Below, piece after piece: positions 10,822-63,783 of a DNA stretch of 64,000 nucleotides. The stretch is from IMG/VR virus record IMGVR_UViG_3300027759_000046, positions 189,138 through 253,137 of that record. One strand, 5' to 3'. Position 1 is the first letter of the stretch; the number at the start of each line of letters is the position of its first letter. Made by a program: the position numbers and the translations under genes. Under the pieces are notes generated by a model. That model saw only the letters and a list, made by a program, of their open reading frames with translations. It did not search any database and was not told where the DNA came from.

Positions 10822-10902
10822 ATTAGTTATTTATCGTTTAGTTATTTTACTCCATTTACTGGTACGGATTTCGCGAATAAATAACTAAAAGAATCAAACT
10901 TA

Positions 10903-12888
10903 ATGATTAATTCATTTATTCAAATGGTTAACGAATCAGCCGATTTAGAACTAGGCCAAGAAGGTCTTGTTGATGAGATGGGAGTTAAACGCCCAGAAAG
11001 TTTAACAGGCAGTGAAATGGGAACAATTCGTCAATCTTCAATTCAACACAGGCAAAATCAGACAAACGTTCCACGTAAAAAGAACTATCACGAATTGGTC
11101 GTGGAGCTAGTTGACGATTTAAAGCGTATGCCTAGAACAGAGATCACAATGGAGAAACCAGCAAATTCTCGATACTATTATCCAAAGTTACCGGCTGCTA
11201 TTGTGCAAAAAATGCGCGAAGCCTATGCACTAAACTCTAGATCATTTGTCCAAGATATTGGAAATTGGAGAGACATTAGTCCAAACGATTCAGACGCAAT
11301 CTATTTTAAGATTGAAGCACCTAGTGATCATCAACGAAGCCATTTTCCAAACGGCGGAATTCCGCCAATGCTTAGAGGAACTGGACTAGGTTACAAATTA
11401 TATAGAGCCCTACTTAAAACAGCCGGATATCTTTCTTCAAACCGTTCTGGATCAAATGAAAAAGATAAAGCTTGGGGTTCTCTACTTGCTCAAAAAACAA
11501 ATCCTGACGGAACTTTGTCAGTAGATGACGCTCACGCAATTATTGGTAAGTCCAATTGGATGGCACTAGACAAGGGAATGTCTGACCGTGGGAAAATAGA
11601 TGCAGCTGTCAGTTTCATAACTAACACAGTCGGAGTTCAACGAACTCAGCCCGATAAATTTGATATGGATGATGAGCTATTGTCAATTCTACCGGACGAT
11701 TTTCTGGTTAAATTGGACCCAGCTTATTTGCAATCACTAGTTGATGATGGTCGTATTACTCAGGAAAAATACAGACAAATTGAAGATTCAAGAAGTGAAG
11801 CTGACCGTCGTGAAAGAGAACGTCAAGCTCAAGCTGAAATTGAAGCACGCGAACGTCGTGCTAGAGAAGAGGCTGAGACTCGTCGTCGTTTAGCTAGTCG
11901 AATCCAACAGTTTGGTGCAGACCCAGACGCTGAATGGAGTGTTGGCGATTATATCGTAGTTAAGTCTTACCTATTTGACGCTTCATATAACGGTTTACCT
12001 ATTCGTCGAGTGGTTTCACAAAACGGCGGTACTTATATAGCTGTTAAAATCTCAGATGCAATTAGAATTGATAATGGCGATATTACTCCAAATCAAGCAA
12101 ACGATAATCGATCAACATCTGACAAATCACAATGGGTTAAAGTAAACCTTGATCAAATCCCAGATCTAACGCGAGTTAATTTAACTGACGCTGAGCGTAC
12201 GTACCTTGAGGGTCAAATGGATCCCGAAACTGCGGCTAGAGCAAGAGCAGAACGTGAGGAAGCTGAACGCGAAAGACGCGAAGCTGAACGTAGAGAAAAC
12301 GAGGAACGTGCTAGAAATAGAGAAACATTCGGTTCTTTACCCGATAATGCTGGTGAATTAAAGACTTCTCAAACTGCGAGAAATAATGGCTCAATCAGAG
12401 AAGCTGATCTATTAAAGAAATTTAGAGATTCATATTTCACAGATAGAATGGAGATCATTGTAATGGGACCGCAACAGAGAGAAGCTCTAAGAAATTCATT
12501 TGGTGTTCCAGTATTCATTGCATGGACCGGTTCATCAAGACGTCCAATACCAGCGTCTCTTGATACAATAAATAATGATCCACAATCTGTTAAATTAACG
12601 AATGCTGTAACCGGCTTTACAATTGATGCACCGTTTACTGGTCTTGGCCTAATGGCATATCCATTAACTGAAGTAACAGTTGACGATAAAATGAGAGCTA
12701 GAGCAGGAACTCACTATTATATCTCTGGCCATAAGAATGCCTTTGGTATTCTCGCAAAGAGTGATTATGGTGCAGTTAATACATCTGCTCAGAAATTTAT
12801 CTACGTTAAAGCATACGGATACGGAGAACGTAGCGTATCAGTTAGATTAGATTTATTAAGAAAGATTGGAACTCCTACTGAGCTGTAA
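10903..12888 (+). CDS. leader-tagged multidomain protein with GNAT acetyltransferase-like motif
   Basis: MINSFIQMVNE; IPPMLRGTGLGYKLYRALL matches the GNAT acetyl-CoA motif R/QxxGxG; Glu/Arg-rich coiled-coil linkers. Confidence 0.6.
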   Translation: MINSFIQMVNESADLELGQEGLVDEMGVKRPESLTGSEMGTIRQSSIQHRQNQTNVPRKKNYHELVVELVDDLKRMPRTEITMEKPANSRYYYPKLPAAIVQKMREAYALNSRSFVQDIGNWRDISPNDSDAIYFKIEAPSDHQRSHFPNGGIPPMLRGTGLGYKLYRALLKTAGYLSSNRSGSNEKDKAWGSLLAQKTNPDGTLSVDDAHAIIGKSNWMALDKGMSDRGKIDAAVSFITNTVGVQRTQPDKFDMDDELLSILPDDFLVKLDPAYLQSLVDDGRITQEKYRQIEDSRSEADRRERERQAQAEIEARERRAREEAETRRRLASRIQQFGADPDAEWSVGDYIVVKSYLFDASYNGLPIRRVVSQNGGTYIAVKISDAIRIDNGDITPNQANDNRSTSDKSQWVKVNLDQIPDLTRVNLTDAERTYLEGQMDPETAARARAEREEAERERREAERRENEERARNRETFGSLPDNAGELKTSQTARNNGSIREADLLKKFRDSYFTDRMEIIVMGPQQREALRNSFGVPVFIAWTGSSRRPIPASLDTINNDPQSVKLTNAVTGFTIDAPFTGLGLMAYPLTEVTVDDKMRARAGTHYYISGHKNAFGILAKSDYGAVNTSAQKFIYVKAYGYGERSVSVRLDLLRKIGTPTEL

Positions 12889-13627
12889 CTGGATGCATTT
12901 CGTAGAATCTAGCAAGACGCTCACGAAATTTAAAATAGTATTCTTTCATTTCGCTAGCTGACATTGTAAAATGCTGAGGCTTATCGTCGACTTCATTTGA
13001 AATCCAGATCTGACATCTTGTAGTTTTAATCTGCATTCTATCCCATACTGCAACTGAATATGCGGCAACTTGGTGTTTATAGTCTTCGATCCATTTCTCG
13101 TCTTTTGGTTTACGAGCCGTTTTGAAATCGACGATCGCATAATCGTCCGTTATTAATTGTGAAACGTTATCGACTGTTCCAGCGTATCCGCCGTCTCTTG
13201 GTGTCCATAAGAATCTTTCTTGTGCAATAACCTTTTTAATTTCCTCAAATGACTTTGACTTAATAAAATTGTAGAATAAGGTTCCACCGACTATTTTTGC
13301 ACGATTGTCAAACTTCTCTATCTCATCGTCTAACCTAGATAAGGATAGAGTTTCTTCTAATCGGTCCTTTGAGCTTAATGATGCTGGAAGATTAAGGTAA
13401 ATTTCACAGAGTCTGTGCATTACTGTTCCACGATTAGCTGCATCCTTGCCAATTTGGTCTGCTTTCTGATGGCCAACTCGGTCTCTCCATGCGTTTAGAC
13501 CTGTCTTATCTGAAGTCTCTCCGAGGACAGTAGTCACACTCGGAAAGGTTCCAATTATATGAGTATCATTACTTACTTGGTAATACCTGAAGCCATTGAT
13601 CTCAACTCTCTTTATTTTCTCGTTCAT
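12875..13627 (-). CDS. PD-(D/E)XK exonuclease (T4-like phage exonuclease)
   Basis: PSVTTVL, RGTVMH, YAGTVD, IVDFKT and QVAAY motifs. Confidence 0.9.
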   Translation of the reverse strand: MNEKIKRVEINGFRYYQVSNDTHIIGTFPSVTTVLGETSDKTGLNAWRDRVGHQKADQIGKDAANRGTVMHRLCEIYLNLPASLSSKDRLEETLSLSRLDDEIEKFDNRAKIVGGTLFYNFIKSKSFEEIKKVIAQERFLWTPRDGGYAGTVDNVSQLITDDYAIVDFKTARKPKDEKWIEDYKHQVAAYSVAVWDRMQIKTTRCQIWISNEVDDKPQHFTMSASEMKEYYFKFRERLARFYEMHPVTAQ

Positions 13628-13681
13628 TTGGATAAATAATTAAACTAGTATCTAGTACATAAAATACTCGTAAAGTTTAAC

Positions 13682-14056
13682 ATGCTTAAGAAATTTGATG
13701 AATTTAATGAAACCTTGAATGAGGGTTTTTGGGACTGGTTGACAGGCAAGTCTGAAAAGGGAGAAAAGAAGGACAAAGTGACCAGTGCTAAAGAGGGTCC
13801 AATTGATGCAAAGGTAGCAGAATATTATAAAACGCTACAGGATTTTGCTGATGCTGGCAAATCTATTGAAGTTCAGTCACTTGGCAATATGTCTTATTCT
13901 AAAATGGTTGAAGATATTCAACTTGCGTTGGAATTCCTAGGTTATAAACTTGAAAAATACGGAGTTGATGGATACTTTGGCCCAGAGACTTCTGCTGCCA
14001 TTGTTAAATTCAATCAAGATACCTTAAATAAAATACCAGATTCTCAACATGATTAA
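13682..14056 (+). CDS. peptidoglycan-binding domain protein, leader-tagged
   Basis: MLKKFDEFNETLNE; IQLALEFLGY...GVDGYFGPETSAAIVKFN. Confidence 0.8.
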   Translation: MLKKFDEFNETLNEGFWDWLTGKSEKGEKKDKVTSAKEGPIDAKVAEYYKTLQDFADAGKSIEVQSLGNMSYSKMVEDIQLALEFLGYKLEKYGVDGYFGPETSAAIVKFNQDTLNKIPDSQHD

Positions 14057-15299
14057 AGGATTCGATCAATTTACTGGAAAGATTAATGAAGCTTCAAACG
14101 GTCAGCTAAATGATGCTGACCTAGTTCCAATTCAGCCACTCGGTAAGAGCGGCGGAAACCATAAATTAAATTCACAAGCAGCAAAAGCATACGAAGAAAT
14201 GAAGAAGGCTGCTGAGGCAGACGGTGTAACTTGGGGTATTACTGACTCGTATCGAGATTATGAAGCCCAAGTTGATGTTGCTGCACGTAAAGGTCTTTAC
14301 AAAAATGGAGGATTGGCGGCAGTTCCTGGAACATCAAATCACGGATGGGGTAGTGCTCTAGATCTTGACCTAAATTCTGAAGCTCAAGAATGGTTAAAGA
14401 AGAACGCTGAAAAATTTGGATTCACAAATATTCCAAGAGAACCTTGGCATTGGGAACATAAAGCCAGTGTTGAGCTAGCAAAGACTGGAAAAGAAGGCAC
14501 TGGATCTTCAGCTAAAGTCGGATCAGTGCTAATTGATTCAGATCTAATTAAGAGACTGATTGCAAAATTAAAAGAGAAGAATTTCAGCCAAAAGGATCTA
14601 GACCAGTACATTGCTAAGTCTTCGTCAGGTAAAGGCGCAAACTTTAAAAGCGGTGAAAAGTTTCCTGCTGAAAATATGAAAGCCATTGAAAAAGCAATGG
14701 ATGATCATGGTATAACAAATGAATATGCTAGAAAGGCAATTCTTGGAGTTATTTCAAAAGAATCTCCAGGTTTAAAATCTGAAATAAGTTATTCTGGAAC
14801 AAGTGCTGCTCGAATTAGAGAAGTTTTCCCAAGTAAATTTGGTGATAAATCTGATTCTGAGATTGACGACATTAAGAAAGACGATGCTATGTTTTGGGAT
14901 GTAGTGTATGGCGGTAAATACGGAAACACTGAACCTGGAGACGGTTCAAAGTACCGAGGCCGTGGTTTTAATGGAATAACATTCAAATCAAATTACGAAA
15001 ACTTACAGAGAATTTACGACAGGTCTGGCGCTAAGGTTGGCAATATTGATATTGTTAAGAATCCTGAACTTCTTGAAAAACCTGAAGTTGCAGCCGAATT
15101 CGCTGTTCTATATTTCATGGATACTTTTAAACGTCACGGTAAGGATGTGAATTCCTACACTGATTTAGAGTCAGCCGTTACTGATTACGTTCAAGCAAAT
15201 GCAGGCTGGGGAACTTCTTTAGCTGGTGCAGTCACATCAAAGGGTTTACAAAAGGCAATGGACTTTGCGAAATCATTAGATACAGACCAAATTGCTTAA
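14049..15299 (+). CDS. M15B (VanY-like) peptidase fused to GH19-like glycoside hydrolase
   Basis: SYR..EAQ, PGTSNHGWGSALD and EPWHWE; GNTEPGDGSKYRGRGFNGITFKSNY; MIKGFDQF..INE leader. Confidence 0.88.
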   Translation: MIKGFDQFTGKINEASNGQLNDADLVPIQPLGKSGGNHKLNSQAAKAYEEMKKAAEADGVTWGITDSYRDYEAQVDVAARKGLYKNGGLAAVPGTSNHGWGSALDLDLNSEAQEWLKKNAEKFGFTNIPREPWHWEHKASVELAKTGKEGTGSSAKVGSVLIDSDLIKRLIAKLKEKNFSQKDLDQYIAKSSSGKGANFKSGEKFPAENMKAIEKAMDDHGITNEYARKAILGVISKESPGLKSEISYSGTSAARIREVFPSKFGDKSDSEIDDIKKDDAMFWDVVYGGKYGNTEPGDGSKYRGRGFNGITFKSNYENLQRIYDRSGAKVGNIDIVKNPELLEKPEVAAEFAVLYFMDTFKRHGKDVNSYTDLESAVTDYVQANAGWGTSLAGAVTSKGLQKAMDFAKSLDTDQIA

Positions 15300-15301
15300 C
15301 T

Positions 15302-16219
15302 ATGAAACACCTACTTGAATATAAAATATTTGAATCAGCTGAGAGGATTATTGATGCAACGGCTGGCGCTGGAACAGATGAGGAATCTCTGGTGCAAGCG
15401 ATTGCTGGCATTCAAACGCCTGAAGACCTATCTAAAATTGATGCAGAACTTGCTTCAAACCTAAATTCTGAATATAAAAGCGTAAAAGATGCAATAGCTG
15501 GAGAGCTTGGAGTTTTTGATACAGTTTACAAGGACGCAATTGCTCAAAAGTTTAGTCAGTTAGGTTTGCCTAACTACTTAGAAGACGGAATAATTCCAGT
15601 TAAATCAGATAAAGTAGAAAAGACTCAAATTGAAAAACCTATCAAATCTGCCATGGCTGAAACACAAACTCTTTCTCAAGGAAAAATCAATATTAATTCA
15701 AATAAATCTGCTCCGTTAATTGTTGTATTCGGTGGAATTGATGTGGGTGGACGATCGAGTGGTTCTTATATGTATGACTATTTTAAAGAGGCTACTTTAT
15801 CGAAAGCGACAACATTTATTGCAAATTCTTCAAAAATAGACGGCTCTAAAGCCTGGTCTGAAATATCTGGTTTAAACTTAACTCCATCTAAAAAGATTCT
15901 CTACCTATTCTCTGGTGGATATTTACCTGGGATGAGCTTGCTAAATAAGGTAGCTGCATCCGAGTGGGCTGCAATTTATCTAGTTGATATTTGGATAGGT
16001 CAAAACTCAAATACTGAGAATTTCTATACAAAACTCACAGCGGACTTTCCTGACAAAGTAAAATACTACTATACTGGCGGAGAGAATTCAGCAGGTGGAT
16101 CCAATAACCTAAAGGCAAAGAAGGAAATGATTGACTCTGTTAGCTATTCAAAGGGTGCAGGCTCTCACATGGGAGCAAATGATATTGCGGTAAACGACCT
16201 TAATGGAGATATCTCCTAG
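15302..16219 (+). CDS. annexin-like repeat fused to alpha/beta-hydrolase-like domain
   Basis: GAGTDEESLVQAI...AIAGELG annexin-like; VVFGG and LFSGG hydrolase-like; MKHLLEYKIFE leader. Confidence 0.5.
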   Translation: MKHLLEYKIFESAERIIDATAGAGTDEESLVQAIAGIQTPEDLSKIDAELASNLNSEYKSVKDAIAGELGVFDTVYKDAIAQKFSQLGLPNYLEDGIIPVKSDKVEKTQIEKPIKSAMAETQTLSQGKININSNKSAPLIVVFGGIDVGGRSSGSYMYDYFKEATLSKATTFIANSSKIDGSKAWSEISGLNLTPSKKILYLFSGGYLPGMSLLNKVAASEWAAIYLVDIWIGQNSNTENFYTKLTADFPDKVKYYYTGGENSAGGSNNLKAKKEMIDSVSYSKGAGSHMGANDIAVNDLNGDIS

Positions 16220-23848: not shown

Positions 23849-24328
23849 ATGAAAAGACACGTTCAAATTTTCGAAAATTTTGAAAGAGCGTTTGATAACG
23901 TTTACGGAGCAAATCCCTTAATAGAAAAAGCCAAAGTTGATCAAGACGGCGACGGCGATACTGATTACGTTGACGCAAAGGTTGCTCAATATCAAAAGGG
24001 CGGTATTAAAAAAGGCCAAGCAATTGCAAAGGCAAAAATGTTTGCAAAAAAGAATAATATTAAAGACTCTATCAAAGACTCGAATAAGACAGTAAAAGAG
24101 GGCTTTTTTAATAGATGGACAAAACCTTCTATTGATCAAGCTGCTCATGATTCAGTAAGGGGTCAAGGCCACAGCCACCGAGGAAACGACGATGGAGAGT
24201 ACATTATGTTTGACGGTCAAAAATTTAGCCAAGATCAAATTGAGTATGCTGACTATCATGATATGGGCAGAATTCCTAGGGTTGAAGATGGCATATTAAT
24301 TATTGCTGATCCAAATTGGAGTAATTAA
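23849..24328 (+). CDS. leader-tagged protein with DxDxDG Ca-binding-like loop
   Basis: MKRHVQIFENFE; DQDGDGDTDYVD. Confidence 0.55.
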   Translation: MKRHVQIFENFERAFDNVYGANPLIEKAKVDQDGDGDTDYVDAKVAQYQKGGIKKGQAIAKAKMFAKKNNIKDSIKDSNKTVKEGFFNRWTKPSIDQAAHDSVRGQGHSHRGNDDGEYIMFDGQKFSQDQIEYADYHDMGRIPRVEDGILIIADPNWSN

Positions 24329-24331
24329 TCT

Positions 24332-24359
24332 AAAACTGGTTGAGAGTATTAAGTAGAAT
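24332..24359 (+). promoter_or_regulatory. bipartite AAAAC-N15-AGTAGAAT promoter-like motif
   Basis: same spacing found at five other sites in the window (see findings). Confidence 0.6.
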
Positions 24360-24382
24360 AGGCTAAATCAAAAACTTAAAAT

Positions 24383-24580
24383 ATGTATTATTTAGCAAAA
24401 CTACGCTTTGAGTCAGAAGACGACAATGGCAAACAAAAAAAGATTAGAGAACAGTATTTGGTGCAAGCATCTTCAGTTGGAGAAGCTGAACAAAAATTAA
24501 TGGATCGATTTGGACAAGGAATTTCACCTTGCCAGTTAGAAGCAGTTCAAGAATCAAAAATCTTAGGCCTTATTGAATAA
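24383..24580 (+). CDS. DUF4494-like small protein
   Basis: NGKQKKIREQYLVQASSVGEAE resembles the Bacteroidota DUF4494 N-terminal domain. Confidence 0.7.
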   Translation: MYYLAKLRFESEDDNGKQKKIREQYLVQASSVGEAEQKLMDRFGQGISPCQLEAVQESKILGLIE

Positions 24581-24602
24581 AGGTTAGCTGAGACTAAAAA
24601 AG

Positions 24603-24628
24603 AAAAGGAGCATTAAGCTCCTTTTTTT
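24603..24628. terminator. bidirectional intrinsic terminator
   Basis: AAAAGGAGC-ATTAA-GCTCCTTTTTTT between convergent genes. Confidence 0.85.
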
Positions 24629-24848
24629 ATGTGAAATATGTTGGAAATTTAGAAGAGAGGCTCTTCAGTATAGTAGGATCATCTTTGCCTTCGTGCATCA
24701 GCTCATAGGCATGATCGAATATTTTGATGCTGGTGGCATTACCTATGATTGCATCAATCTTGCGACGAACAACTGACGTTGGCCCGTTTTCGTGTATCAG
24801 CTTAACTAGGTTAGCTGGCTCTGGAATAAAGTACTTGTTGAAACTCAT
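24627..24848 (-). CDS. hypothetical protein
   Basis: 73-aa ORF preceded by GTATAATA. Confidence 0.55.
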   Translation of the reverse strand: MSFNKYFIPEPANLVKLIHENGPTSVVRRKIDAIIGNATSIKIFDHAYELMHEGKDDPTILKSLSSKFPTYFT

Positions 24849-24872
24849 ATTTTTATTATACTCTGATTAAAC

Positions 24873-24903
24873 AAAAAAGGTTAGCTTTTTAGGGCTAACC
24901 TTT
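24873..24903 (-). terminator. intrinsic terminator closing the candidate ncRNA
   Basis: minus strand AAAGGTTAGC-CCTAAAAA-GCTAACCTTTTTT. Confidence 0.85.
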
Positions 24904-24904
24904 G

Positions 24905-25325: not shown

Positions 25326-25346
25326 TTTAAAGAACTTATGTTAATA

Positions 25347-28694: not shown

Positions 28695-29993
28695 TTAAAA
28701 TTCTCTTTGTGTTTCGTATACTGTTTTAATAACTGGAAATCTTAATGAGTGGTTTCCGTGTTGATCAGTCGTTTCTTCAAAAAACTGAACCGTAATTGTT
28801 TTACCTAAAATTTCATTTGGGTTTTGAAAGTAGTGGCGACGTTGTTCAAGAGAAAAACCTGATCCAACTCTGACTTGATTGCCTTTATGCTGAACGAATA
28901 CTGCTTTCAGCATTTCCTCTTCTTCTTCACGGCCGTTTTCAATAACTCGGTGAGTTCCGTTTTCAAGACCAGTTACTTGATACTCAGCATCATGCATCTT
29001 TTTAACCTTTAACAGGTTCTTTGAGCGTTTGCCTTCGTATCCAACATCCTTACGAATCATGATGCCTTCGTATCCCATTTCAGTTGCATCAGCTGCAACC
29101 TTTTCAAAATGTTCTCGATCAGTTAATTTGAATTGAGGCAATGGCTCTGCGAATTCCAGTCCAGTACTCGATGCCACCAAGTAAGCATTTATCATGACTA
29201 ACCTAGCAGATAGAGTTATTTCGCTTGTTCCGCTTGTAAATTCGTCAAGATCCAATAGGTCAAATACATAATACTTTGGAGTTTCAATAGTGTGGTCCTT
29301 TTTGCCTATTTCTTTGATAATCCCCTGAAAATCTTCAAGGCCAGAATCTCGCATGATACAAACTTCGCCATCTAGAACTTTAGACCTAAGACCCAATTTC
29401 ATAAGGTCTTGGCGTAAAGCATCGAGAGTTAAGAACTCCTTGCCTTGACGAGAAAAGAACTTAATATCACCAGCTTCATCAATTACGGTGATGCAACGAA
29501 CTCCGTCTAGCTTACGACTTGCCCACCACATACCTGAATCAAAATCTACTTTCTTCTCAGCCGATTCAAATTTTTCAGCTAATGCAACTTCAAAGGTCGG
29601 CACTGTCCCAGGCAGGACAGAATTGATTAAGGTAGAGGTTGCTCGGGTTTTAATATTGCGATCTATCACATCATAGATGATGTCTGCGAACTCCTTATAT
29701 TTTGCGATAAAACCATTAACTGCTTGTATTGCATTGTGGCCAGTCACATGACGTTCATTCAGATCATCAAGCATCGCAAACAGATCAGTATAATTATCGA
29801 AAATTAGGTCAGATCTCTTTTTGAGATTTGCTGAAGTAACATGATACTGCTTAAATGGCGTGTACGTGTACTTAAATATTTTTCGTAGGAATGGAGAATC
29901 GTATTTTTGCAGAATCTCTTTTTTGGCATTAGTCGAAGAAGTAGCTTTCATCTCTTCAATAAACTCCCTAAGGTTGGTAAAGTCTGTATGCAT
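28695..29993 (-). CDS. ATP-dependent DNA ligase
   Basis: KLDGVR, LDGE, EGIMIR, LLKVK, VGSGF and SLRFP. Confidence 0.95.
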   Translation of the reverse strand: MHTDFTNLREFIEEMKATSSTNAKKEILQKYDSPFLRKIFKYTYTPFKQYHVTSANLKKRSDLIFDNYTDLFAMLDDLNERHVTGHNAIQAVNGFIAKYKEFADIIYDVIDRNIKTRATSTLINSVLPGTVPTFEVALAEKFESAEKKVDFDSGMWWASRKLDGVRCITVIDEAGDIKFFSRQGKEFLTLDALRQDLMKLGLRSKVLDGEVCIMRDSGLEDFQGIIKEIGKKDHTIETPKYYVFDLLDLDEFTSGTSEITLSARLVMINAYLVASSTGLEFAEPLPQFKLTDREHFEKVAADATEMGYEGIMIRKDVGYEGKRSKNLLKVKKMHDAEYQVTGLENGTHRVIENGREEEEEMLKAVFVQHKGNQVRVGSGFSLEQRRHYFQNPNEILGKTITVQFFEETTDQHGNHSLRFPVIKTVYETQREF

Positions 29994-34680: not shown

Positions 34681-34729
34681 GTGTATAAATTATTGTTTAG
34701 TAAATTTTACTCAAAAAGATTCGCAAGTT

Positions 34730-35209
34730 TTAGCGAAGGCGATCTAAAATTATGCGCTGGGACGCAGAAACGTGTGTGTATGCCTCTTCGACATCCATAA
34801 AACCTGCCCAGTCAAGTTCTTCAAGCTGAAGTTGTTCTTTTGGAACACGTAAGCCAGTCAAGCCGATTTCAGATAGCTCAGAGATTCTGCAAACCAGATA
34901 ATGAATGTTATTCTTGAATTTAGTCCCGCTCCAAACTTCGGCAGTTTGTATGGCAGGTTCAACTTGGTCTTGGCGAATCCGAAGACCTGTCTCCTCAAAT
35001 GTTTCGCGAAACGCTGCTTCTTCTGGAGATTCTCCATCTTCCATTTTTCCCTTGGGAATTCCCATAGTGGGTTTAACCCAACTTGAATTAGTTGGATGCA
35101 CCAATAGGATCATAGGTTTTTGAGTGTCAGCTGGTGTATAAACTATTGCAATACCTGCCGAATCAGATCGCTTCTTAGGCTTTGTGAAATTATCGAAAGT
35201 ATCAATCAT
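34730..35209 (-). CDS. Nudix hydrolase
   Basis: Nudix box PKGKMEDGESPEEAAFRETFEETGL. Confidence 0.93.
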   Translation of the reverse strand: MIDTFDNFTKPKKRSDSAGIAIVYTPADTQKPMILLVHPTNSSWVKPTMGIPKGKMEDGESPEEAAFRETFEETGLRIRQDQVEPAIQTAEVWSGTKFKNNIHYLVCRISELSEIGLTGLRVPKEQLQLEELDWAGFMDVEEAYTHVSASQRIILDRLR

Positions 35210-45696: not shown

Positions 45697-47715
45697 TTAA
45701 ACTCTAATTTTAATTCCTTGGCCGACTAGGGCATCATATATTGCATGTAGATAATATTCAGATAAGCCGGATCCAGCATTTGCTTCCTGATTTTTTGTTT
45801 CATCAGTATTTTTAGCAGGATCAGACTGGTTTGCGGTAGGATTAACTGAATTTGAATTATTTACTGTGCTTAAATTTGAATTATTTACTGTGCTAGACTC
45901 TGCAGTTTTAATATTTGAAACTGCTTTATTAATTTCGGTTGCGGTACTTGCAGAAGTTTGAATGATTGTTTTTCCGAGTTGAGCAACTGCCGCTTCCGTT
46001 TTATTGGGAGGGTTAATGATATTGTTTGCCTGATCTCCCTTAAGTAAAGTTTTTGATTCGGTTTTTACTAGATCAGCAGTCGGTGATTTCGTCTCAGTTT
46101 TAGTTGGCTGATCTGCAGAGTCGTCTTTATCAATTTCAGGAGATTCAGCTGTATCAGTTTTGCCAGCAACAACGTCTGACGGCTTTCCAATAGTGACAGT
46201 AGATTCCTTTTTCTTGAGTTCAGCCTCTTCTAGTATTCTCTTGCTCTTCTCAAGCTTCTCTTCCCTAGTCTTGGTCTTCTTCTCCTCAGTCTCCATCTTA
46301 AATTTTCTACGTTCTCCATTGAGAACCGCAATAATATCAGGTAAAGTTCCAGGATCTTTAGCAAAGGCTTGAGCCATTTGAACCTGTTTGGCCTCATCAA
46401 GTTTAAGAAGTTCGGTTCTATATTTTAAACTTTCTTTCCAGTTTGCACCCTGTAGACTTATGTACAGTTGGCTTCTAGCAGCCTCATTTGATAATGGTTT
46501 AACGCTAGCAGCAGACAACACGTCTGAGCCAGTCGATGGCTGTATAGAATTATTGACTGTGGTATTTTGAACAGACGACTGATTTGTTACGTTCTGCGCA
46601 ATTTGATCACCAACTTGGGTATTTGAGGTTTGATTCGTTTGATTTTCAACCTTAGGGGCTACAGGTTTGTCAGAAGTACTTTGGTTTTCTGGAAGTTTAG
46701 GTTGGTTCGTTTGAGTAGTAACCGCAACTTCTGGAGAAGTTTCCTCAACTTGAGCCTCAGCGATTCCTTCTGTGTTTAAGCCGGTATTTTTAACAGTAGG
46801 TTCAGATGAACTGGCCGGTGCAGCTTTTGCTGATTGAGTAGACAATACGTTACCAGGAGTCGGTTGAGCGGGCGCACCGGATTTCTCAACGAGACTTAGT
46901 AAAGTTTGACTAGGTTTAAGTTCAGAATATGCAGCGGACTCAAATATAAAGCGGTTTTCAAATTCAATAATAAATTCGATAACCGGAAAGTTATTTGCTT
47001 TTAGCGCAGAATTGTCAACTCCTTTTTTAGAAGTAGTCCCCTGTTCCATTAATACTTTAATGTGATTTACAACAGACTTATCTGCGATTAATTTTTTAAC
47101 CTTTGCTACGGTTGCCCCATTCTTTGAATATAAGGGCTCTCCTTTATAGAAGTCAAGTAACCAACCTGTTACCTGATTATACATTGAATTAAAGTGATCA
47201 GTTAAAACTGAATCATCTAGTTTGACTGTTGAATTATTAACTGATTGCCATTTTACATGGGAATTTATTGCTAGCGAGTATATGGATTTGACAATAATTG
47301 GTGAATCTTCCAATAAATGAAATAGATCTTCTCTAAGCTTATTGAACAGGTCAACTGAATCTATGCTGGATCCACCTTGTATAAACTTGAATGAAGGATT
47401 TCCAGCAAGAACGTTAAAGTAGCTTCTAACACTTTTTGAGTCTGACGCAGTTAACACGCTAGTGGGAGGTATGTCTTTCCATTTTGAAGTTGCATACCAA
47501 AAACCTCCTTGAGTTTTGTTAAAGTACGCATGTACAAGTTTAATCCACTGCTCTCTATGTTCAGGAGTCGATCCAAGGTAGGGAAAAATTAATTGTTCTA
47601 GGTCTTCATAGGCCTTGTCATACGCTTCTGCTCCAGCTGAGTAATCTTTATTTAGCTTAGCGGTAGCATCTCGGTATGCAGTAAGAAAGGCTGGTCTAAT
47701 TATGTAATCTGCCAA
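45697..47715 (-). CDS. large low-complexity putative tail/baseplate protein
   Basis: 672 aa; AATAAATAA upstream; follows the gp26/gp51-like pair. Confidence 0.5.
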   Translation of the reverse strand: MADYIIRPAFLTAYRDATAKLNKDYSAGAEAYDKAYEDLEQLIFPYLGSTPEHREQWIKLVHAYFNKTQGGFWYATSKWKDIPPTSVLTASDSKSVRSYFNVLAGNPSFKFIQGGSSIDSVDLFNKLREDLFHLLEDSPIIVKSIYSLAINSHVKWQSVNNSTVKLDDSVLTDHFNSMYNQVTGWLLDFYKGEPLYSKNGATVAKVKKLIADKSVVNHIKVLMEQGTTSKKGVDNSALKANNFPVIEFIIEFENRFIFESAAYSELKPSQTLLSLVEKSGAPAQPTPGNVLSTQSAKAAPASSSEPTVKNTGLNTEGIAEAQVEETSPEVAVTTQTNQPKLPENQSTSDKPVAPKVENQTNQTSNTQVGDQIAQNVTNQSSVQNTTVNNSIQPSTGSDVLSAASVKPLSNEAARSQLYISLQGANWKESLKYRTELLKLDEAKQVQMAQAFAKDPGTLPDIIAVLNGERRKFKMETEEKKTKTREEKLEKSKRILEEAELKKKESTVTIGKPSDVVAGKTDTAESPEIDKDDSADQPTKTETKSPTADLVKTESKTLLKGDQANNIINPPNKTEAAVAQLGKTIIQTSASTATEINKAVSNIKTAESSTVNNSNLSTVNNSNSVNPTANQSDPAKNTDETKNQEANAGSGLSEYYLHAIYDALVGQGIKIRV

Positions 47716-48923: not shown

Positions 48924-48945
48924 TTTTACTAAAGTGTTTAGTTAA

Positions 48946-49398
48946 TTATATCACGAACTCTAGGAAGGTTTTCGCTAGATGTGACTTGGACTCGTTTAGG
49001 CGATTTAGAGTTTCAGGATAGACTTCAATAGTCTTTAGAGTTTTAGGATCTCTAATGAATGCTCTAATTGTTTTAGTTTGCTTATCGATCTTTAGGGATT
49101 CGAAATTGCCTATTACGACTTGTGGATTTTTATCCTTGGTAGCAAAAGTTGAATTTACCTTTACTCCGCTTATTCTTGAACCCTTCTTAAATTGACGATT
49201 CATGGCTTTTATCTCTTCTTCAAATTCGTCAATTTCAACCTGAGCAGGTCTAGAAAGATCAGATAGAGGCAACAGCTTTATTGCAATACCATTACTAAAC
49301 GGCGATTTAGACGCAACGAAATTAAAGTCAGCCTTTCCGTAAAAAGGTAGACCTTGCATTGCCTGCTGTCTTTGGCCGAATGTTAGTACTGGTGTCAT
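48946..49398 (-). CDS. hypothetical protein
   Basis: late-cluster ORF; C-terminal LNESKSHLAKTFLEFVI. Confidence 0.55.
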   Translation of the reverse strand: MTPVLTFGQRQQAMQGLPFYGKADFNFVASKSPFSNGIAIKLLPLSDLSRPAQVEIDEFEEEIKAMNRQFKKGSRISGVKVNSTFATKDKNPQVVIGNFESLKIDKQTKTIRAFIRDPKTLKTIEVYPETLNRLNESKSHLAKTFLEFVI

Positions 49399-51524: not shown

Positions 51525-52031
51525 TTATTTTCGGTGCAATAAGTTGTCAATTACCGTAGCAATTGCCTGATAATTAAGTGCTCCCTGTACGATCCAGTAG
51601 ATTAAAAACGTGGCAATTGCTGCCCATGTGATAACGTACACAGAGTCTAGCCAATTAGAGATCTTACGATATTTGATTTGAATAAGATATGCGTAATATT
51701 CTTCGGTTTTTATACGGTCAGTCTGAGCTTCGATTAATTCAGCAAGGCCAGCTGTCTCAAATGTGCTCTTCTTAAAAGAAATTGACTCGAGCACTCGGCT
51801 CTTTTCAAGCTCGAGAGTTTCCATTCCCATCATTAGGGTCTCAGGCTCAAGATTTAAAACATAATATGCACGATGGCGCATGTCTAATCGCATACCGAGC
51901 TGTTTAAGAGAACCGTTTTTCTCCAGAGTCTTCATTGTTTTTCGATAGAAATTACGATTTGCAATGTTTTTAACAATTTGCATAAACGTTTCGTAGAACG
52001 TTTTCGGATTAAGTAAGTTAAGTAGTCCCAT
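51525..52031 (-). CDS. hypothetical membrane protein
   Basis: C-terminal TM segment. Confidence 0.55.
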   Translation of the reverse strand: MGLLNLLNPKTFYETFMQIVKNIANRNFYRKTMKTLEKNGSLKQLGMRLDMRHRAYYVLNLEPETLMMGMETLELEKSRVLESISFKKSTFETAGLAELIEAQTDRIKTEEYYAYLIQIKYRKISNWLDSVYVITWAAIATFLIYWIVQGALNYQAIATVIDNLLHRK

Positions 52032-52033: not shown

Positions 52034-52660
52034 TTAAAAATATTGTTCTAAGTTATCTCGCATTTGAGGATTTTTTTCAAGAACTCTGTCTTTTACCATT
52101 TTACGAGCCTTTCTGATTTTGGTTTTAACGGTATTCAGGTTCATGCTGTACTTTTCAGCAATTTCGTTACCTTTCATTAAATGAATCTCCTTGTCTATTA
52201 GAATTGACTTTTCAATACAGTCAGGCAGAGCGGCCATTTCCATTTGGGTCATGTTGTACAGTGAATCTAGGTAAATCTCTTTATCGAAATTGAAAGCTGA
52301 ATCATCTTCAATTGCTGGAGGCGAAAGCATATTATCTAAACGAACGGCCCATTGCTTTTGCAATTTGTGTTTATGCAATAGAGATTCGTTCTTTGCGATT
52401 GTATAGATCCAAGTTGTGAATCTGAAATTATCGTTATACGAAGCCAATCCTTTAAATATTTTAAAGAGAGTATTATGTAGAACCTCTTCGGTTTCGTCCG
52501 GGTCATTAAAAAATTTCCAGATGAAATATTTTAATTTTGGATACATAATAGAGGCTAGTCTATTTCTATCTCTTTCGGTGTACTCGCCGGCTTTAATTTT
52601 TTCGGCAAGTGATTGCATCTCATCGTTGAGCTGTTTGTTAATTAAGTCGTATGACGTCAT
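52034..52660 (-). CDS. RNA polymerase sigma-70 factor, ECF-like
   Basis: region 2 EEVLHNTLFKIF...FTTWIYTIAKN; region 4 EIAEKYSMNLNTVKTKIRKAR. Confidence 0.92.
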   Translation of the reverse strand: MTSYDLINKQLNDEMQSLAEKIKAGEYTERDRNRLASIMYPKLKYFIWKFFNDPDETEEVLHNTLFKIFKGLASYNDNFRFTTWIYTIAKNESLLHKHKLQKQWAVRLDNMLSPPAIEDDSAFNFDKEIYLDSLYNMTQMEMAALPDCIEKSILIDKEIHLMKGNEIAEKYSMNLNTVKTKIRKARKMVKDRVLEKNPQMRDNLEQYF

Positions 52661-58301: not shown

Positions 58302-58401
58302 CGGTAACGGACTTCTTTTTGATTATTTATCAGCCCAATCTTTTCTTTGCAAAACCATGACCTTGGATAAATACTTTTAGTATAATACTTTTATACTACA
58401 T

Positions 58402-58770
58402 GGGGGTGCTTGGATTTGACGCGGATGGTTCAAGTATGCTCGCACGCCGAGGATGATGCTAAGACTCGCTAAAACGTATCAAAACGATAAGTGGAAACAC
58501 TAACTTCTGGAGCCTAGTTAACGCTGGCGTTAGCACTCCGGTTACTGAAGAGCTTTTAGCTGCATAAGTAACCAAGCGGCAACTGCTTGACCGAACCAAA
58601 GTTGCAAAACCAGCATGGCGTAGCGGCCAAGTCTAACCGTTACCGACTTTTAGCTCTAAGTCGTTAAAGAATGAGATAGTTGGTCCAGTTAGAAAATGGG
58701 ACTAAGCGTGTGAACGAGAGTTTACTCGAAAATCTTGCGGACACGGGTTCGACTCCCGTCACCTCCACCA
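58402..58770 (+). ncRNA. ssrA: tmRNA
   Basis: 5' GGGGGTG pairs with 3' CACCTCC-ACCA with a G3:U wobble; GGATTTGAC 5' motif; T-arm CGGGTTCGACTCCCG; tag ORF 58493-58567 GNTNFWSLVNAGVSTPVTEELLAA*. Confidence 0.96.
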
Positions 58771-60990: not shown

Positions 60991-63333
60991 CTATATGAGG
61001 CCGAGAGCGGTCTTTATTTTATCAATTACCGTTGATGTTTTGATTGTTCTAGAGCACTCAAACATTCGGTGAGTTCCTTTGTGTACTGGACACCAGTTCC
61101 AATCAGCCGGATCAAGCTTGTGAGTATTGAAACAGCCTGAACATTTGCCGGCTGGTGCACAAACTCTATGAGTGTTCTCAACCGTTTCGGTGTAATCATA
61201 CGAGAATCCTGAAATAAGGACAAGTGGGGTCGTGGTTGCCCAAGCCAACCAGCTTAGTCCACTACCAATTCCTACAAAGACTTGAGACTCTTCAAGTTCA
61301 CGAATGACATTCTCGATTGGACCTGACGCTAATTTGCGAACGCTAGTTGGATGAGAATTACCCATGAAGCCATCTTCTTCTCTTGACACCAGCACTACTT
61401 CATAACCGGTTTCCTTACACCAGTCAACTACTTCTTGCCAGCCGTCTGGATTATTCCAGTATTTTGCTTGGCATGTGCCGTGAATTGCGATTGCGATCTG
61501 TTTTTTCTTTTCAACCTTTGGAATCGCAAGTAGAGGTTTAGTCTCTTTATACTCAAGACCCAAGATATCAAATGCACATTTTTGCATTGCCTGATCCTTG
61601 ACTTCTTTGACGTTTCGGTTTAGATCAATTTTATGATCTTGATCGTAATACCAGCCAATATTGTACATTGCAACAATATTATCAACAACATCGCCAGGTT
61701 TAATGAACTCAATTTCCGGATACTGTTTTTCAAAAAGTTGGTTTAGATGAGTTGAACAAATTACCTTGCAACCGTGCTTCTTACGAAACTCTTCAACTGC
61801 TGGAAACCAGGCCAAACTATCGCCAAGAGAAGATGAATCTACTGAAATATAGACTCTACGATCTTTTAGGCTAATTGACTCGTCTAGGACAAGTTGACCG
61901 CTTTCTTTGTGAGTTACCTTAACTCTCCAATCAATATAGTATCGCTTATTTGACTTGACCCACATATTACGGGTGATTGTGTCCTTGTGCTCGACCTTGC
62001 CAGTTTTCTTATTAATAAACTCAACTAAGTATTCGCCTGGGGCTCCCCCAGTTATCTCTACGTGTGGTCCATTTACGAAATGATAGTTAATAGTCAAGTC
62101 TTTTGCACGCTTTAGATTCACCTCTCTGATGTGACTTGAACGTTCATCAATATGATCAGCTGCAAGCCGTGCAACTCTATCCCAGTTAAAATCTTGATGG
62201 ATCTTTTGAGCATCAGCTAGCGCCTTCTCCTTATGTGATTTATAATTTAAGTAGGCATCTCTCATTGCTCTACGTAAGTCGTTAAAATCAGGCTCATAAT
62301 AATTGCCAACGATATCTGCAGTAGTTACGGTCGGTTTATCTTCCGCTGAGCCAAGCGCTGAGCGTTCGCCAACAATTTTGACTGGAATACCTTTGCCTTC
62401 AGCAAACTCCATTTGGCCTGAGCACTCTGAATAGATTGATGGAGTTCCGCAAGCCATTGCCTCGATTAGTGGCAGATTCCAGCCTTCACTACGCGCACAT
62501 GATACAAATACGTTAACTGACTTGATTAGGTCAACGTACTCTTTTCTTGGCGGCATGTGTAATACTTTAATACGGTCGTCTTTGAATTCGTATTTTGCTA
62601 AGCGCTCTTCGGTTGTTTGACAACCGTCTGCACTAAAGCCCCATGGATTATCAGCAGATAAGATTAGATCTACAGGTTCGTCCGCTGAAAATTCTTCCAA
62701 GAAAGCTCTAACTATTTCGGTTGTAGATTTGCGGTAATCCCAACGACCGAATAGGCCGAATGTAAATCGGTCTTCTCCGGTTAATGGATGAACGACATTT
62801 TCAGGAAAGAATGTCTCAATATCAACTCCTTCTGGGATTACAAATATTTTATCAGCTGGGTAGCCCTGTTTGACTGTGCAATCTCGTTGCCATTTAGACG
62901 GAACCCAAACTTCATCAAATTCTAATAACTTATCAAAGAACTCTGATGGCTGTAGCGTTGATTCCCAAACGTTATAGGCAATCTTGTAATTATCGTAATT
63001 GTGATAAAAGTAATGATGATTAGTTTCGTTTAGAATTAGGTCGACATGAGTCTGGCCGAGGTTTGGCCAAGATTGATATACTTTATGATCGCTAAGAGTA
63101 CGATCTCCATTCCATAGAGATTGCTCAACAAGTAAAGACTTGATCTGATCTGTCATATACGCCTCACCATTATGAGGTTCGTCAGACATACCCTCCCACG
63201 AAGATCCTACTGTGTAGTTTCGGATTTCAAGAGGAAGCCTCTCTGCTAATTTTGTGAAAAATGATTGAGCATGATTATTATAACCGGTATTGCCAATAAA
63301 AGATGTGTGGACCTTGAGTTTTAACTTTGACAC
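60991..63333 (-). CDS. GT4 glycosyltransferase fused to Aah/TibC-like O-heptosyltransferase domain
   Basis: EGWNLPLIEAMACG (GT4); SLGDSLAWFP, GIGSGLSWLAW and CSGCFN..WCPVHKGT.RMFECSRTI (Aah/TibC Cys ligands). Confidence 0.88.
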   Translation of the reverse strand: MSKLKLKVHTSFIGNTGYNNHAQSFFTKLAERLPLEIRNYTVGSSWEGMSDEPHNGEAYMTDQIKSLLVEQSLWNGDRTLSDHKVYQSWPNLGQTHVDLILNETNHHYFYHNYDNYKIAYNVWESTLQPSEFFDKLLEFDEVWVPSKWQRDCTVKQGYPADKIFVIPEGVDIETFFPENVVHPLTGEDRFTFGLFGRWDYRKSTTEIVRAFLEEFSADEPVDLILSADNPWGFSADGCQTTEERLAKYEFKDDRIKVLHMPPRKEYVDLIKSVNVFVSCARSEGWNLPLIEAMACGTPSIYSECSGQMEFAEGKGIPVKIVGERSALGSAEDKPTVTTADIVGNYYEPDFNDLRRAMRDAYLNYKSHKEKALADAQKIHQDFNWDRVARLAADHIDERSSHIREVNLKRAKDLTINYHFVNGPHVEITGGAPGEYLVEFINKKTGKVEHKDTITRNMWVKSNKRYYIDWRVKVTHKESGQLVLDESISLKDRRVYISVDSSSLGDSLAWFPAVEEFRKKHGCKVICSTHLNQLFEKQYPEIEFIKPGDVVDNIVAMYNIGWYYDQDHKIDLNRNVKEVKDQAMQKCAFDILGLEYKETKPLLAIPKVEKKKQIAIAIHGTCQAKYWNNPDGWQEVVDWCKETGYEVVLVSREEDGFMGNSHPTSVRKLASGPIENVIRELEESQVFVGIGSGLSWLAWATTTPLVLISGFSYDYTETVENTHRVCAPAGKCSGCFNTHKLDPADWNWCPVHKGTHRMFECSRTIKTSTVIDKIKTALGLI

Positions 63334-63378
63334 AGAATAGGGTGTTTATAAGCTTATACTCAAGGTCCTCATCAGGTT

Positions 63379-63783
63379 TTATTCGCAAGGGGTAAACCTA
63401 GCAATCATTCCTCCACCGTCATACTGGAAAGAATATCCGCCTATTTCCGAGTCTGACTCAACGTAATAGTATTGGCCCTGCTGTAAGTTTTCAAACGGCA
63501 TAGATACTTCGGCATCGAGCCATATTCCAGAAAAGCCGTCGTCAATATACAATCTGCCCGGGTCAACTGGTATTCCGTTTTTATTGGTTGAGCATGCCGA
63601 ACCAACATCCAAGAATCCTCCATTGCCTGGAATCATTCCGAATAGCACAACCACATAAGAGTCACCGCCGCCACTAACACCAGTTAAGTCGACGCCGATC
63701 ACATTTGAGCTGTTTTGGAGAGAGGCCCCGCTTAGTTCAACTCCGTTGCTTAAGTCTACTCCGTTAATGTTTACCTTAGCCAT
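63379..63783 (-). CDS. putative virion-associated protein
   Basis: 134-aa Gly-rich beta protein starting MAKVNINGVD. Confidence 0.5.
   Translation of the reverse strand: MAKVNINGVDLSNGVELSGASLQNSSNVIGVDLTGVSGGGDSYVVVLFGMIPGNGGFLDVGSACSTNKNGIPVDPGRLYIDDGFSGIWLDAEVSMPFENLQQGQYYYVESDSEIGGYSFQYDGGGMIARFTPCE

What the first reader, a model, noticed from the sequence alone, without database searches (positions are those of the whole stretch)
10844..63380. Second, bipartite promoter class AAA(A/T)C-N15-nGTA(T/A/G)AA, possibly read by the phage ECF-like sigma
Seen with identical spacing: AAAAC-15-AGTAGAAT (24332-24359 +), AAAAC-15-AGTATAAG (63353-63380 -), AAAAC-15-AGTAAAAT (34704-34731 -), AAATC-15-AGTAAAAT (10844-10871 -), AAAAC-15-GATATAAT (48945-48972 -) and TAAAC-15-TGTACTAG (13652-13679 -). 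Several are followed within a few nt by (C)TAAAC. Established: ECF promoters often have AAC at -35, and the Bacteroidota housekeeping consensus (TTTG / TAnnTTTG) is different. Inference: a middle regulon of the sigma factor at 52034-52660.
Basis: partly seen in the sequence, partly recalled or inferred. Interest (0 to 1): 0.6.

Follow-up and report, generated by a model that had tools for sequence, protein, structure and literature searches.

The report
Conserved middle-gene promoter motif of jumbo phage
The two-part DNA motif is a real promoter class, conserved across a family of uncultivated freshwater jumbo phages, that switches on recombination genes and the phage's late sigma factor; which of two phage sigma factors reads it is still open.

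Summary
The pattern occurs 7 times in the window against 0.54 expected. The window is the last 64 kb of a 253-kb phage genome.

Evidence that the motif is real:
- Genome-wide, AAC-N16/17-GTAnAA occurs 41 times, 23 of them in the 7.9% that is intergenic.
- An AAC peak 16-18 nt upstream of GTAnAA exists only at intergenic sites. It recurs in three related genomes.
- Orthologous promoters keep both blocks while their spacers diverge.
- An unbiased gapped-dyad search recovers AAAC-N15-AGTA as one of the two strongest signals.

Downstream genes are gp32-like SSB, UvsX-like recombinase, an exonuclease, transferases, and the operon holding a T4 gp55-like late sigma. That fits a middle regulon.

The sigma assignment is not established. 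The phage encodes three sigmas:
- an RpoD-like one behind a conserved host-type early promoter;
- the ECF-like one at 52034-52660;
- the gp55-like one, which explains a separate ATAAATAA late class.

The ECF gene has no promoter of its own in six genomes and lies in a late-headed baseplate/terminase/PhoH operon. If it read this class, a timing deadlock would follow. My estimates are RpoD-like about 0.45 and ECF-like about 0.3. This is a new member of a known kind.

The parts
24332..24359 (+). Class promoter: AAAAC, 15 nt, AGTAGAAT. It lies 24 nt before the 65-aa DUF4494 gene (24383-24580).
   Evidence: Both blocks are kept with a diverged spacer in G001 and G002. PWM 15.5. Pfam DUF4494.
34704..34731 (-). 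Class promoter: AAAAC, 15 nt, AGTAAAAT, then CTAAAC. It precedes the 192-aa gene 34102-34680.
   Evidence: Conserved in G001 and G002 with changed spacers. PWM 18.2.
63353..63380 (-). Class promoter: AAAAC, 15 nt, AGTATAAG, then TATAAAC. It precedes the 780-aa double glycosyltransferase gene 60991-63333.
   Evidence: G001 keeps the blocks with a 17-nt spacer. PWM 16.3.
10844..10871 (-). Class promoter with the ATC variant of the -35: AAATC, 15 nt, AGTAAAAT, then CTAAAC. It precedes the 239-aa gene 10102-10821. A late-type ATAAATA lies between it and the start codon (tandem promoters).
   Evidence: The -10 and (A/G)ATCC are kept in G001 and G002. ATC at the same offset is enriched in G006. PWM 18.2.
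48945..48972 (-). Probable class promoter with a deviant -10: AAAAC, 15 nt, GATATAAT, then CTAAAC. It precedes the 334-aa gene 47919-48923 and overlaps the last codons of the upstream gene.
   Evidence: Conserved in G001 and G002, but coding constraint could explain that. Below PWM 13.
13652..13679 (-). Probable class promoter with a deviant -10: TAAAC, 15 nt, TGTACTAG. It precedes the PD-(D/E)XK exonuclease gene 12875-13627.
   Evidence: TAAAC and GTA(C/A)TA are kept in G001 and G002 with changed spacers. Below PWM 13.
58391..58417 (-). Doubtful match: AAATC, 15 nt, AGTATAA. It lies 90 nt before the baseplate-wedge gene, at the head of the operon that holds the ECF-like sigma gene. The -35 half is the complement of the tmRNA 5' end. 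The -10 half is the complement of the tmRNA leader.
   Evidence: Kept in G001 and G003 but not in G002.
28799..28825 (-). Pattern match inside the DNA ligase gene. Most likely chance; it is identical in relatives because it is coding.
46063..46089 (-). Pattern match inside the 672-aa gene, 368 nt from the next start codon. Most likely chance.
52034..52660 (-). It has no promoter of its own.
   Evidence: Pfam Sigma70_r2. NCBIfam TIGR02985 at 1e-18, plus SigZ and SigW. No conserved upstream motif.
58324..58330 (-). Late-type ATAAATA promoter heading the operon baseplate wedge, 81 aa, 245 aa, TerL, 99 aa, PhoH, ECF sigma, 168 aa.
   Evidence: No strong minus-strand terminator inside the operon.

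Best explanation
The motif is a genuine sigma-70-family bipartite promoter class.

Anatomy. The consensus is a-A-A-(A/T)-C-y, 14 variable bases, a-G-T-A-n-A-A-t-a, with 16 nt between the C and the G. The leader is about 20 nt and often starts near (C)TAAAC. The genome carries about 17-22 copies.

Setting. The genome is a 253-kb T4-like jumbo phage, probably of a Bacteroidota host, with no RNA polymerase of its own.

Proposed cascade:
1. Host core RNAP with the host sigma fires a few host-type early promoters at genome 178-186 kb. One of them drives the RpoD-like sigma gene (239 aa, genome 182275-182994, minus strand).
2. That sigma then directs host core RNAP to this class. It probably also reads the related, nearly leaderless TAGTATAATA class.
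3. This switches on recombination, repair and modification genes and the gp55-like late sigma gene.
4. The gp55-like sigma in turn reads about 60 ATAAATAA late promoters.

Shown: the motif, its intergenic position and orientation, its conservation, its target genes, the three sigma genes and their upstream regions.

Inferred: My estimates: real promoter class about 0.9; dependent on a phage sigma about 0.8; RpoD-like sigma as reader about 0.45.
For: Motif reality:
- Searches show enrichment that is confined to intergenic DNA.
- The same AAC peak at -19 appears in G001, G002 and G006.
- A spacing-specific dyad search gives AAAC-N15-AGTA in 20 regions against 1.5 at other spacings.
- The cross-genome PWM gives 16 of 18 top hits intergenic.

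Conservation:
- Orthologous promoters keep the blocks; the alignments were anchored on the motif, so block identity is inflated: 0.90 and 0.83, against 0.50 for the spacer, G0 versus G002.
- Motif presence is shared by orthologues: 9 of 17 against 7 of 196, Fisher 1e-7.
- 45 distinct uvsX upstream regions nearly all keep A(A/T)C-N16(17)-GTAnAA with unrelated spacers.

Targets: gp32-like, UvsX-like, RuvC-like plus gp55-like, exonuclease and transferases.

Cascade logic:
- The gp55-like gene matches phrog_234 at 2e-17 and cyanophage late sigmas.
- Its only promoter is of this class and is conserved in G001 and G002.
- The RpoD-like sigma has a host-type early promoter conserved in four genomes.
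- The ECF gene has none.

Other points:
- The RpoD-like sigma keeps Y430 and W434 of region 2.3. It has lost the sigma-70 residues that read TTGACA, so a non-canonical -35 is expected.
- The -10 is shared with a class that often lacks any -35. By established knowledge, ECF sigmas do not use such promoters.
- No RNAP beta-type domain (Rpb2_6), AsiA or MotA was found; the T7-type RNAP search was uninformative because its control found nothing anywhere.
Against: - No transcription start data exist. The only RNA evidence is metatranscriptome contigs at depth 3-8, which span the promoters and cannot show 5' ends.
- The architecture is what ECF sigmas read: AAC core followed by a pyrimidine, a strict 16-nt spacer, and a -10 that begins GT.
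- In the uvsX promoters of relatives the last T of GTAnAAT is often G, which is unlike a sigma-70 T-7.
- Spacer 16 goes with long leaders and spacer 17/18 with leaderless genes, in G0 and independently in G002 (p 0.005 each). That suggests two recognition modes, and so perhaps two sigmas.
- With four promoter classes and four sigmas, a one-to-one mapping would give this class to the ECF sigma.
- The RpoD-like sigma lacks the Q437 and T440 residues that read -12, so its -10 preference cannot be predicted.
Confidence: 0.45

Rival explanations
1. The ECF-like sigma at 52034-52660 reads this class, and the RpoD-like sigma reads only the leaderless TAGTATAATA class.
For: - The protein is a two-domain ECF sigma; its best models are the Bacteroidetes ECF subfamily, SigZ and SigW.
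- The motif has the ECF hallmarks: an AAC -35 core followed by a pyrimidine, a strict 16-nt spacer and a -10 beginning GT.
- Spacer and leader length separate this class from the TAGTATAATA class in two genomes.
- No fifth motif class was found that could be this sigma's own regulon.
- The pattern match at 58391-58417 heads the operon that contains the gene. If functional, it could give ECF-style autoregulation.
Against: - There is no promoter directly upstream of the gene in six genomes. TerL, a 99-aa gene, PhoH and the sigma gene are tightly coupled (start and stop codons overlapping or within a few to about 40 nt) behind a late ATAAATA promoter.
- The 58391 site is not conserved in G002, and both of its halves are explained by the tmRNA gene on the other strand.
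- The late sigma gene depends on this class. A sigma made only from a late promoter gives a deadlock.
- Two unrelated sigmas would have to read nearly the same -10, GTAnAAT.
Confidence: 0.3
2. Host holoenzyme reads the class. Either the host primary sigma is helped by an unrecognised phage activator that binds the AAAC box (a MotA-like sigma appropriation), or a host ECF sigma does it.
For: - T4 runs the same gene set (32, uvsX, 55) from middle promoters made of a host -10 plus an activator box in place of the -35. This is established knowledge.
- Most phage proteins here have no annotation, so an activator could be hidden.
Against: - No AsiA or MotA homologue was found.
- The -10 GTAnAAT is unlike the Bacteroidota TAnnTTTG. 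A separate class resembling that type exists in the same genome.
- The phage carries two spare sigma genes.
Confidence: 0.15
3. It is not a promoter: a chance pattern in AT-rich intergenic DNA, a repressor or activator site, or a 5'-UTR or translation signal.
For: - The genome-wide count of the loose core (41) is only modestly above a Markov expectation (26.5).
- There are no TSS data.
Against: - The AAC peak is position-specific and appears only at intergenic sites, in four genomes.
- The two blocks are conserved across diverged spacers in dozens of relatives.
- Sites are co-oriented with genes and sit at a fixed 26-39 nt from start codons.
- A PWM trained on other genomes picks intergenic sites 16 times in 18.
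Confidence: 0.07

Closest known systems
ECF (group 4) sigma promoters, for example B. subtilis SigW (TGAAAC, 16 nt, CGTA) and E. coli RpoE (GGAACTT, 16 nt, TCAAA); consensus sequences quoted from memory. General rules in Todor et al. 2020 (PMC7776599).
   Same: AAC core in the -35 followed by a pyrimidine, a -10 containing GT(A), a rigid spacer of 16-17 nt, and a small regulon of about 20 promoters.
   Different: - The -10 here is longer (GTAnAAT-a).
- It is shared with a class that has no -35.
- The ECF-like gene in this genome lacks the autoregulatory promoter typical of ECF sigmas (PMC7776599 used that property to find promoters).
- The setting is a lytic phage programme, not envelope stress.
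T4 middle promoters (MotA box plus host sigma-70 -10; AsiA/MotA sigma appropriation)
   Same: The same functional slot: they drive the gp32, uvsX and gene 55 equivalents between the early and late classes, in a T4-like phage whose late promoters (ATAAATAA) match the T4 TATAAATA type.
   Different: - There is no MotA box sequence and no MotA or AsiA homologue.
- The upstream box sits at the -35 position with a 16-nt spacer.
- The phage supplies whole sigma factors.
Bacillus phage SPO1 cascade (gp28 for middle genes, gp33/34 for late genes)
   Same: A phage sigma made from a host-read early promoter replaces the host sigma. It transcribes middle genes, including the gene or genes for the next sigma.
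   Different: - The promoter sequences are unrelated.
- Here the late sigma is gp55-like.
- A third, ECF-like sigma is present.
phiEco32 and phage 7-11 sigma promoters (PMC4331800)
   Same: Low-copy, well conserved promoters for a phage-encoded sigma, found by comparing intergenic regions. A core with TGT/GTA-TA at the -10.
   Different: - Those promoters are single-block, with no -35.
- The hosts are enterobacteria.
- The phage sigma gene there is preceded by both host and phage promoters.

Membership tests
Sigma-70-family bipartite promoter | Two conserved blocks at about -35 and -10, with a fixed spacer whose sequence is free | tested here: met
   - AAC peak at one offset only.
- Block identity 0.90 and 0.83 against 0.50 for the spacer, G0 versus G002.
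- 45 uvsX upstream variants.
Sigma-70-family bipartite promoter | Intergenic, co-oriented with the gene, and a short distance upstream of the start codon | tested here: met
   - 23 of 41 core matches lie in the 7.9% intergenic DNA.
- Distances to the start codon cluster at 26-39 nt.
Sigma-70-family bipartite promoter | Transcripts start 6-9 nt after the -10 block | not testable with these tools
   Only Logan contigs of metatranscriptomes were on hand, at depth 3-8. Contigs cannot show 5' ends.
ECF-sigma promoter and regulon | AAC in the -35, a rigid 16-17 nt spacer, and a short GT-containing -10 | tested here: met
   The -10 is GTAnAA, with the last T variable in relatives.
ECF-sigma promoter and regulon | A cognate ECF sigma is encoded | tested here: met
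   Window 52034-52660: TIGR02985 at 1e-18, with both domains aligned.
ECF-sigma promoter and regulon | The sigma gene or its operon is preceded by its own promoter (autoregulation) | tested here: not met
   - No motif upstream of the gene in six genomes.
- The operon head has a late promoter plus one doubtful match that is not conserved in G002.
ECF-sigma promoter and regulon | Transcription depends on that sigma | not testable with these tools
   This needs in vitro transcription or reporter assays.
Phage middle class read by a phage sigma (SPO1 gp28 type) | The sigma gene is transcribed from the preceding (host-read) class | tested here: inconclusive
   - Met for the RpoD-like sigma: an early-type promoter conserved in G0, G001, G002 and G006.
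- Not met for the ECF-like sigma.
Phage middle class read by a phage sigma (SPO1 gp28 type) | Targets are replication or recombination genes and the next sigma in the cascade | tested here: met
   gp32-like, UvsX-like, RuvC-like plus gp55-like, and an exonuclease.
T4 MotA-dependent middle promoter | A MotA box (TGCTT core) centred near -30, with MotA and AsiA encoded | tested here: not met
   The sequence shows AAAC at -35. There are no PF09010 or PF09158 matches.
Bacteroidota housekeeping promoter (TTTG / TAnnTTTG) | A -7 TAnnTTTG with a -33 TTTG | tested here: not met
   The motif differs. A separate class, TGTCAA-N11-TATATTT(A/G), carries the host-like -7 element.

The most novel reading that the evidence does not exclude
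The phage would then run its middle regulon, including the gene for its T4-type late sigma, through an ECF sigma whose own gene sits in a late structural operon. That would require an unusual way of supplying the sigma early, such as carry-over in the virion, read-through or a feed-forward loop. It would give a four-tier programme with one host and three phage sigmas, each with its own promoter class.
Probability: 0.25. Interest if true: 0.65.

Novelty: new member of a known kind. Interest (0 to 1): 0.45.

Why it matters
Phage-encoded sigma cascades are textbook for SPO1 and T4. I found no described promoter specificities for the T4-like jumbo phages of Bacteroidota-type hosts or their many uncultivated freshwater relatives. 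The comparative literature records only that such phages carry minimal and RpoD-like sigmas (PMC7824862).

This work gives:
- a conserved, testable promoter consensus;
- a map of four promoter classes against four sigmas;
- a concrete prediction of the regulatory order: host sigma, then RpoD-like sigma, then this class, then gp55-like sigma, then late genes.

It also supplies orthogonal sigma/promoter pairs that could be useful as genetic parts in Bacteroidota.

Tried and rejected
- **RNA evidence.** One sequencing-run search found a lake metatranscriptome holding 56% of the words of window 24001-34000. Laying four RNA runs on 24101-30050 (5,950 letters, within the operators' limit) gave only low-depth contigs. 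They run across promoters and cannot show starts, so there is no TSS evidence.
- **Near relatives in GenBank phages.** None were found by DNA. By protein, only distant ones turned up: huge phages, PAU, PTm1 and Lak. They are too far for motif comparison.
- **Natural knock-out test.** I looked for a relative that keeps the motif but lacks one sigma. The relatives held whole (G001, G002) and G006 (84%) carry both sigmas; the fragments are uninformative.
- **Covariation test.** G006 uses ATC as well as AAC at the -35. That is a mixture, not a switch, so it cannot be tied to a change in either sigma.
- **ECF specificity code.** The code of PMC7776599 needs its datasets and could not be applied from the text.
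- **Fifth motif class.** I searched for a class that could belong to the ECF sigma and found none.
- **Sigma-70 consensus scan.** It found no more sites than shuffles did.
- **Not used or not needed.** No alternative genetic code was needed. 
Full report
**What the window is.** The window is the last 64 kb (189138-253137) of a single 253,137-bp virus record, 94% complete by CheckV. TerL is T4-type. Its nearest named relatives are huge metagenomic phages, Sphingomonas phage PAU, Tenacibaculum phages PTm1/PTm5 and the Prevotella Lak phages. Public runs holding the DNA are freshwater and lake metagenomes. No match to the Rpb2_6 domain of RNAP beta was found, and the T7-type RNAP search was uninformative because its control found nothing anywhere. 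So transcription must use host core RNAP. Shine-Dalgarno 4-mers precede only 1% of genes, and upstream regions are A-rich.

**The observation.** All six sites are as described.
It has 14 in the genome, 10 of them intergenic and mostly 21-30 nt before a start codon.
- Because the pattern was chosen after the fact, I tested it in other ways. Upstream of intergenic GTAnAA sites, AAC occurs at offsets -19/-20/-21 in 12/9/5 cases against about 1.5 at other offsets. The 450 coding GTAnAA sites show no peak.
- The core AAC-N16/17-GTAnAA has 41 genome matches (Markov-2 expectation 26.5), but 23 lie in the 7.9% intergenic DNA.
- A spacing-specific dyad search pooled over three genomes returns two outstanding signals. 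One is AAAC-N15-AGTA: 20 regions against 1.5 at other spacings.

**Conservation.** Searching IMG/VR with the ECF-like sigma gave 80 related loci. I fetched two relatives whole and a third, 84% complete by CheckV, over its full record:
- G001: 252.6 kb, mean 77% protein identity.
- G002: 271.3 kb, mean 60% protein identity.
- G006: 216.8 kb.

Each shows the same AAC peak at -19, in intergenic DNA only.

Orthologous upstream regions keep the two blocks while the spacers change. These alignments were anchored on the motif, which inflates the block identities. This holds for the late-sigma operon, an S1-domain gene, gp32-like, UvsX-like and DUF4494 genes, the 192-aa and 334-aa genes, and the exonuclease gene. 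Genes with the motif in this genome have it in the G002 orthologue in 9 of 17 cases, against 7 of 196 for the rest (Fisher 1e-7). Among 45 distinct uvsX upstream sequences from relatives, nearly all read (A/G)A(A/T)C-N16(17)-GTAnAA with unrelated spacers. A PWM trained only on G002 and G006 finds 18 sites at score >=15 here, 16 of them intergenic, including four reader sites.

The pooled matrix adds further preferences: A at -20, a pyrimidine after the C, A before the G, and T-A after GTAnAA.

**Other promoter classes in the same genome.**
1. *Early type.* A conserved repeat of about 70 nt ends in TGTCAA-N11-TATATTT(A/G). It has six copies, all on the minus strand at genome 178-186 kb, and its -7-like element resembles the Bacteroidota TAnnTTTG.
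2. *Late type.* ATAAATAA occurs at 62 sites within 60 nt of start codons, with no -35, as in T4.
3. *Leaderless type.* TAGTATAATA has its ATG only 13-16 nt after the G, so the mRNAs are effectively leaderless. It often sits right after a terminator hairpin and has either no -35 or AAC at a spacer of 17-18.

Spacer 16 goes with leaders of 19-45 nt, and spacer 17/18 goes with leaders of 18 nt or less. This holds here and independently in G002 (p 0.005 each).

**Targets.**
- The leaderless class precedes thymidylate synthase, topoisomerase II, DNA ligase, UvdE, an exonuclease, ClpP-like, HDAC-like and CAP proteins, and the tmRNA.
- Late promoters precede structural genes such as the baseplate wedge.

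**The sigmas.** The genome has three sigma genes.
- *RpoD/RpoS-like.* 239 aa, at genome 182275-182994 on the minus strand, with regions 1.2, 2, weak 3, and 4. It lies directly behind an early-type promoter that is conserved in G001, G002 and G006. Against E. coli RpoD it keeps Y430 and W434. It has W433F, Q437K, T440N, H455N and E458Y, and it lacks R584, E585 and R588 (the region 4.2 residues were read by eye from the local alignments).
- *ECF-type.* The window's gene at 52034-52660. Its best models are the Bacteroidetes ECF subfamily, SigZ and SigW.
- *gp55-like.* 147 aa, at genome 25444-25887 on the minus strand. It is a T4 gp55 homologue: phrog_234 at 2e-17, with hits to cyanophage late sigmas. 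This accounts for the ATAAATAA class.

**Who reads the class.** The ECF gene has no upstream promoter in G0, G001, G002, G006, G009 or G007. The genes for TerL, a 99-aa protein, PhoH, the sigma and a 168-aa protein are tightly coupled, with start and stop codons overlapping or within a few to about 40 nt. The operon head carries a late ATAAATA, and no strong terminator interrupts the operon.

The RpoD-like sigma, made early, avoids this. By established knowledge of region 3 and extended -10 promoters, it can also use promoters without a -35, which ECF sigmas cannot.

Against that:
- The architecture (AAC-y, rigid 16-nt spacer, -10 starting GT) is ECF-like.
- The last T of the -10 is not conserved in relatives.
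- Four classes and four sigmas invite a one-to-one mapping.

I therefore rate the RpoD-like sigma at about 0.45, the ECF-like sigma at about 0.30, host enzyme with an unknown factor at about 0.15, and no promoter at under 0.1. No AsiA or MotA homologue was found.

**What could not be done.** TSS mapping was not possible. The RNA runs are kept as contigs, at depth 3-8 here, and they cross the promoters. No relative lacking one sigma was found. The literature describes sigma content of jumbo phages (PMC7824862), ECF promoter rules (PMC7776599) and computational promoter inference for phage sigmas (PMC4331800). I found nothing on this lineage's promoters.

**Verdict.** The middle-regulon reading is supported. 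The assignment to the ECF-like sigma is unproven and is weakened by operon and timing logic. This is a new member of a known kind: phage promoter classes for phage-encoded sigmas.

Noticed in passing
window 24871-25326 (minus strand): An abundant structured RNA.
- In a lake metatranscriptome a 486-nt contig covers this stretch at depth 426, against 3-8 for its neighbours.
- The contig is circularly permuted (joint 25326 to 24871), so the reads hold a circular or tandem junction. Two other RNA runs show raised depth at 24920-25248.
- Rfam manA RNA matches 25095-25311(-) over the full model at 44.6 bits (gathering score 55.2), E 5e-10.
- A terminator hairpin ends it near 24876-24900, and a GTTATAATA -10-like box lies at 25346-25354(-).

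   Followed up: partly
window 24887-25564: A relative seen in RNA run X20 (90-95% identical) lacks these 678 nt, joining 24886 to 25565. So the manA-like RNA plus a small ORF is an insertion/deletion polymorphism between close phages.
   Followed up: no
window 58402-58770 (+): A phage-encoded tmRNA (Rfam 113.8 bits; tag ends ...EELLAA). It is preceded by a TAGTATAAT box at 58378-58386(+), so it appears to belong to the leaderless-type promoter class. G002 keeps a GAGTATAATAA box there.
   Followed up: partly
window 4901, 24861, 27095, 27784 and 30006 (minus strand), and about 15 more in the genome: A promoter class TAGTATAATA with the ATG only 13-16 nt after the G, so the mRNAs are effectively leaderless. 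It often sits directly after a terminator hairpin and T run. Genes served include ligase, UvdE, an exonuclease, ThyA, topoisomerase II and ClpP-like.
   Followed up: partly
window 1033, 1703, 4910, 10834, 10877, 16869, 21478, 22282, 32890, 32931, 38533, 42663, 47741, 51524, 58330 and others: T4-late-type promoters, (a/g)ATAAATAAc, with no -35. There are 62 sites within 60 nt of start codons genome-wide, conserved in relatives. They match the gp55-like sigma encoded at genome 25444-25887.
   Followed up: yes
genome 178584-186328, minus strand (locus L017, about 7580-15330): Six copies of a conserved element of about 70 nt ending in TGTCAA-N11-TATATTT(A/G), a host-type early promoter. One drives the RpoD-like sigma gene. 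Several copies also contain AATAAC-N16/17-ATAAAA, a look-alike of the studied class, about 35 nt upstream.
   Followed up: partly
window 51525-52031 (minus strand): The 168-aa gene immediately after the ECF-like sigma gene has no family match and a single C-terminal hydrophobic segment. A tail-anchored anti-sigma-like partner is possible but was not tested.
   Followed up: no
window 9027-10037(-), 4331-4888(-), 60991-63333(-): Unusual cargo: a histone-deacetylase-domain protein, a CAP/SCP-domain protein, and a 780-aa fusion of GT4 and GT9 glycosyltransferase domains.
   Followed up: no
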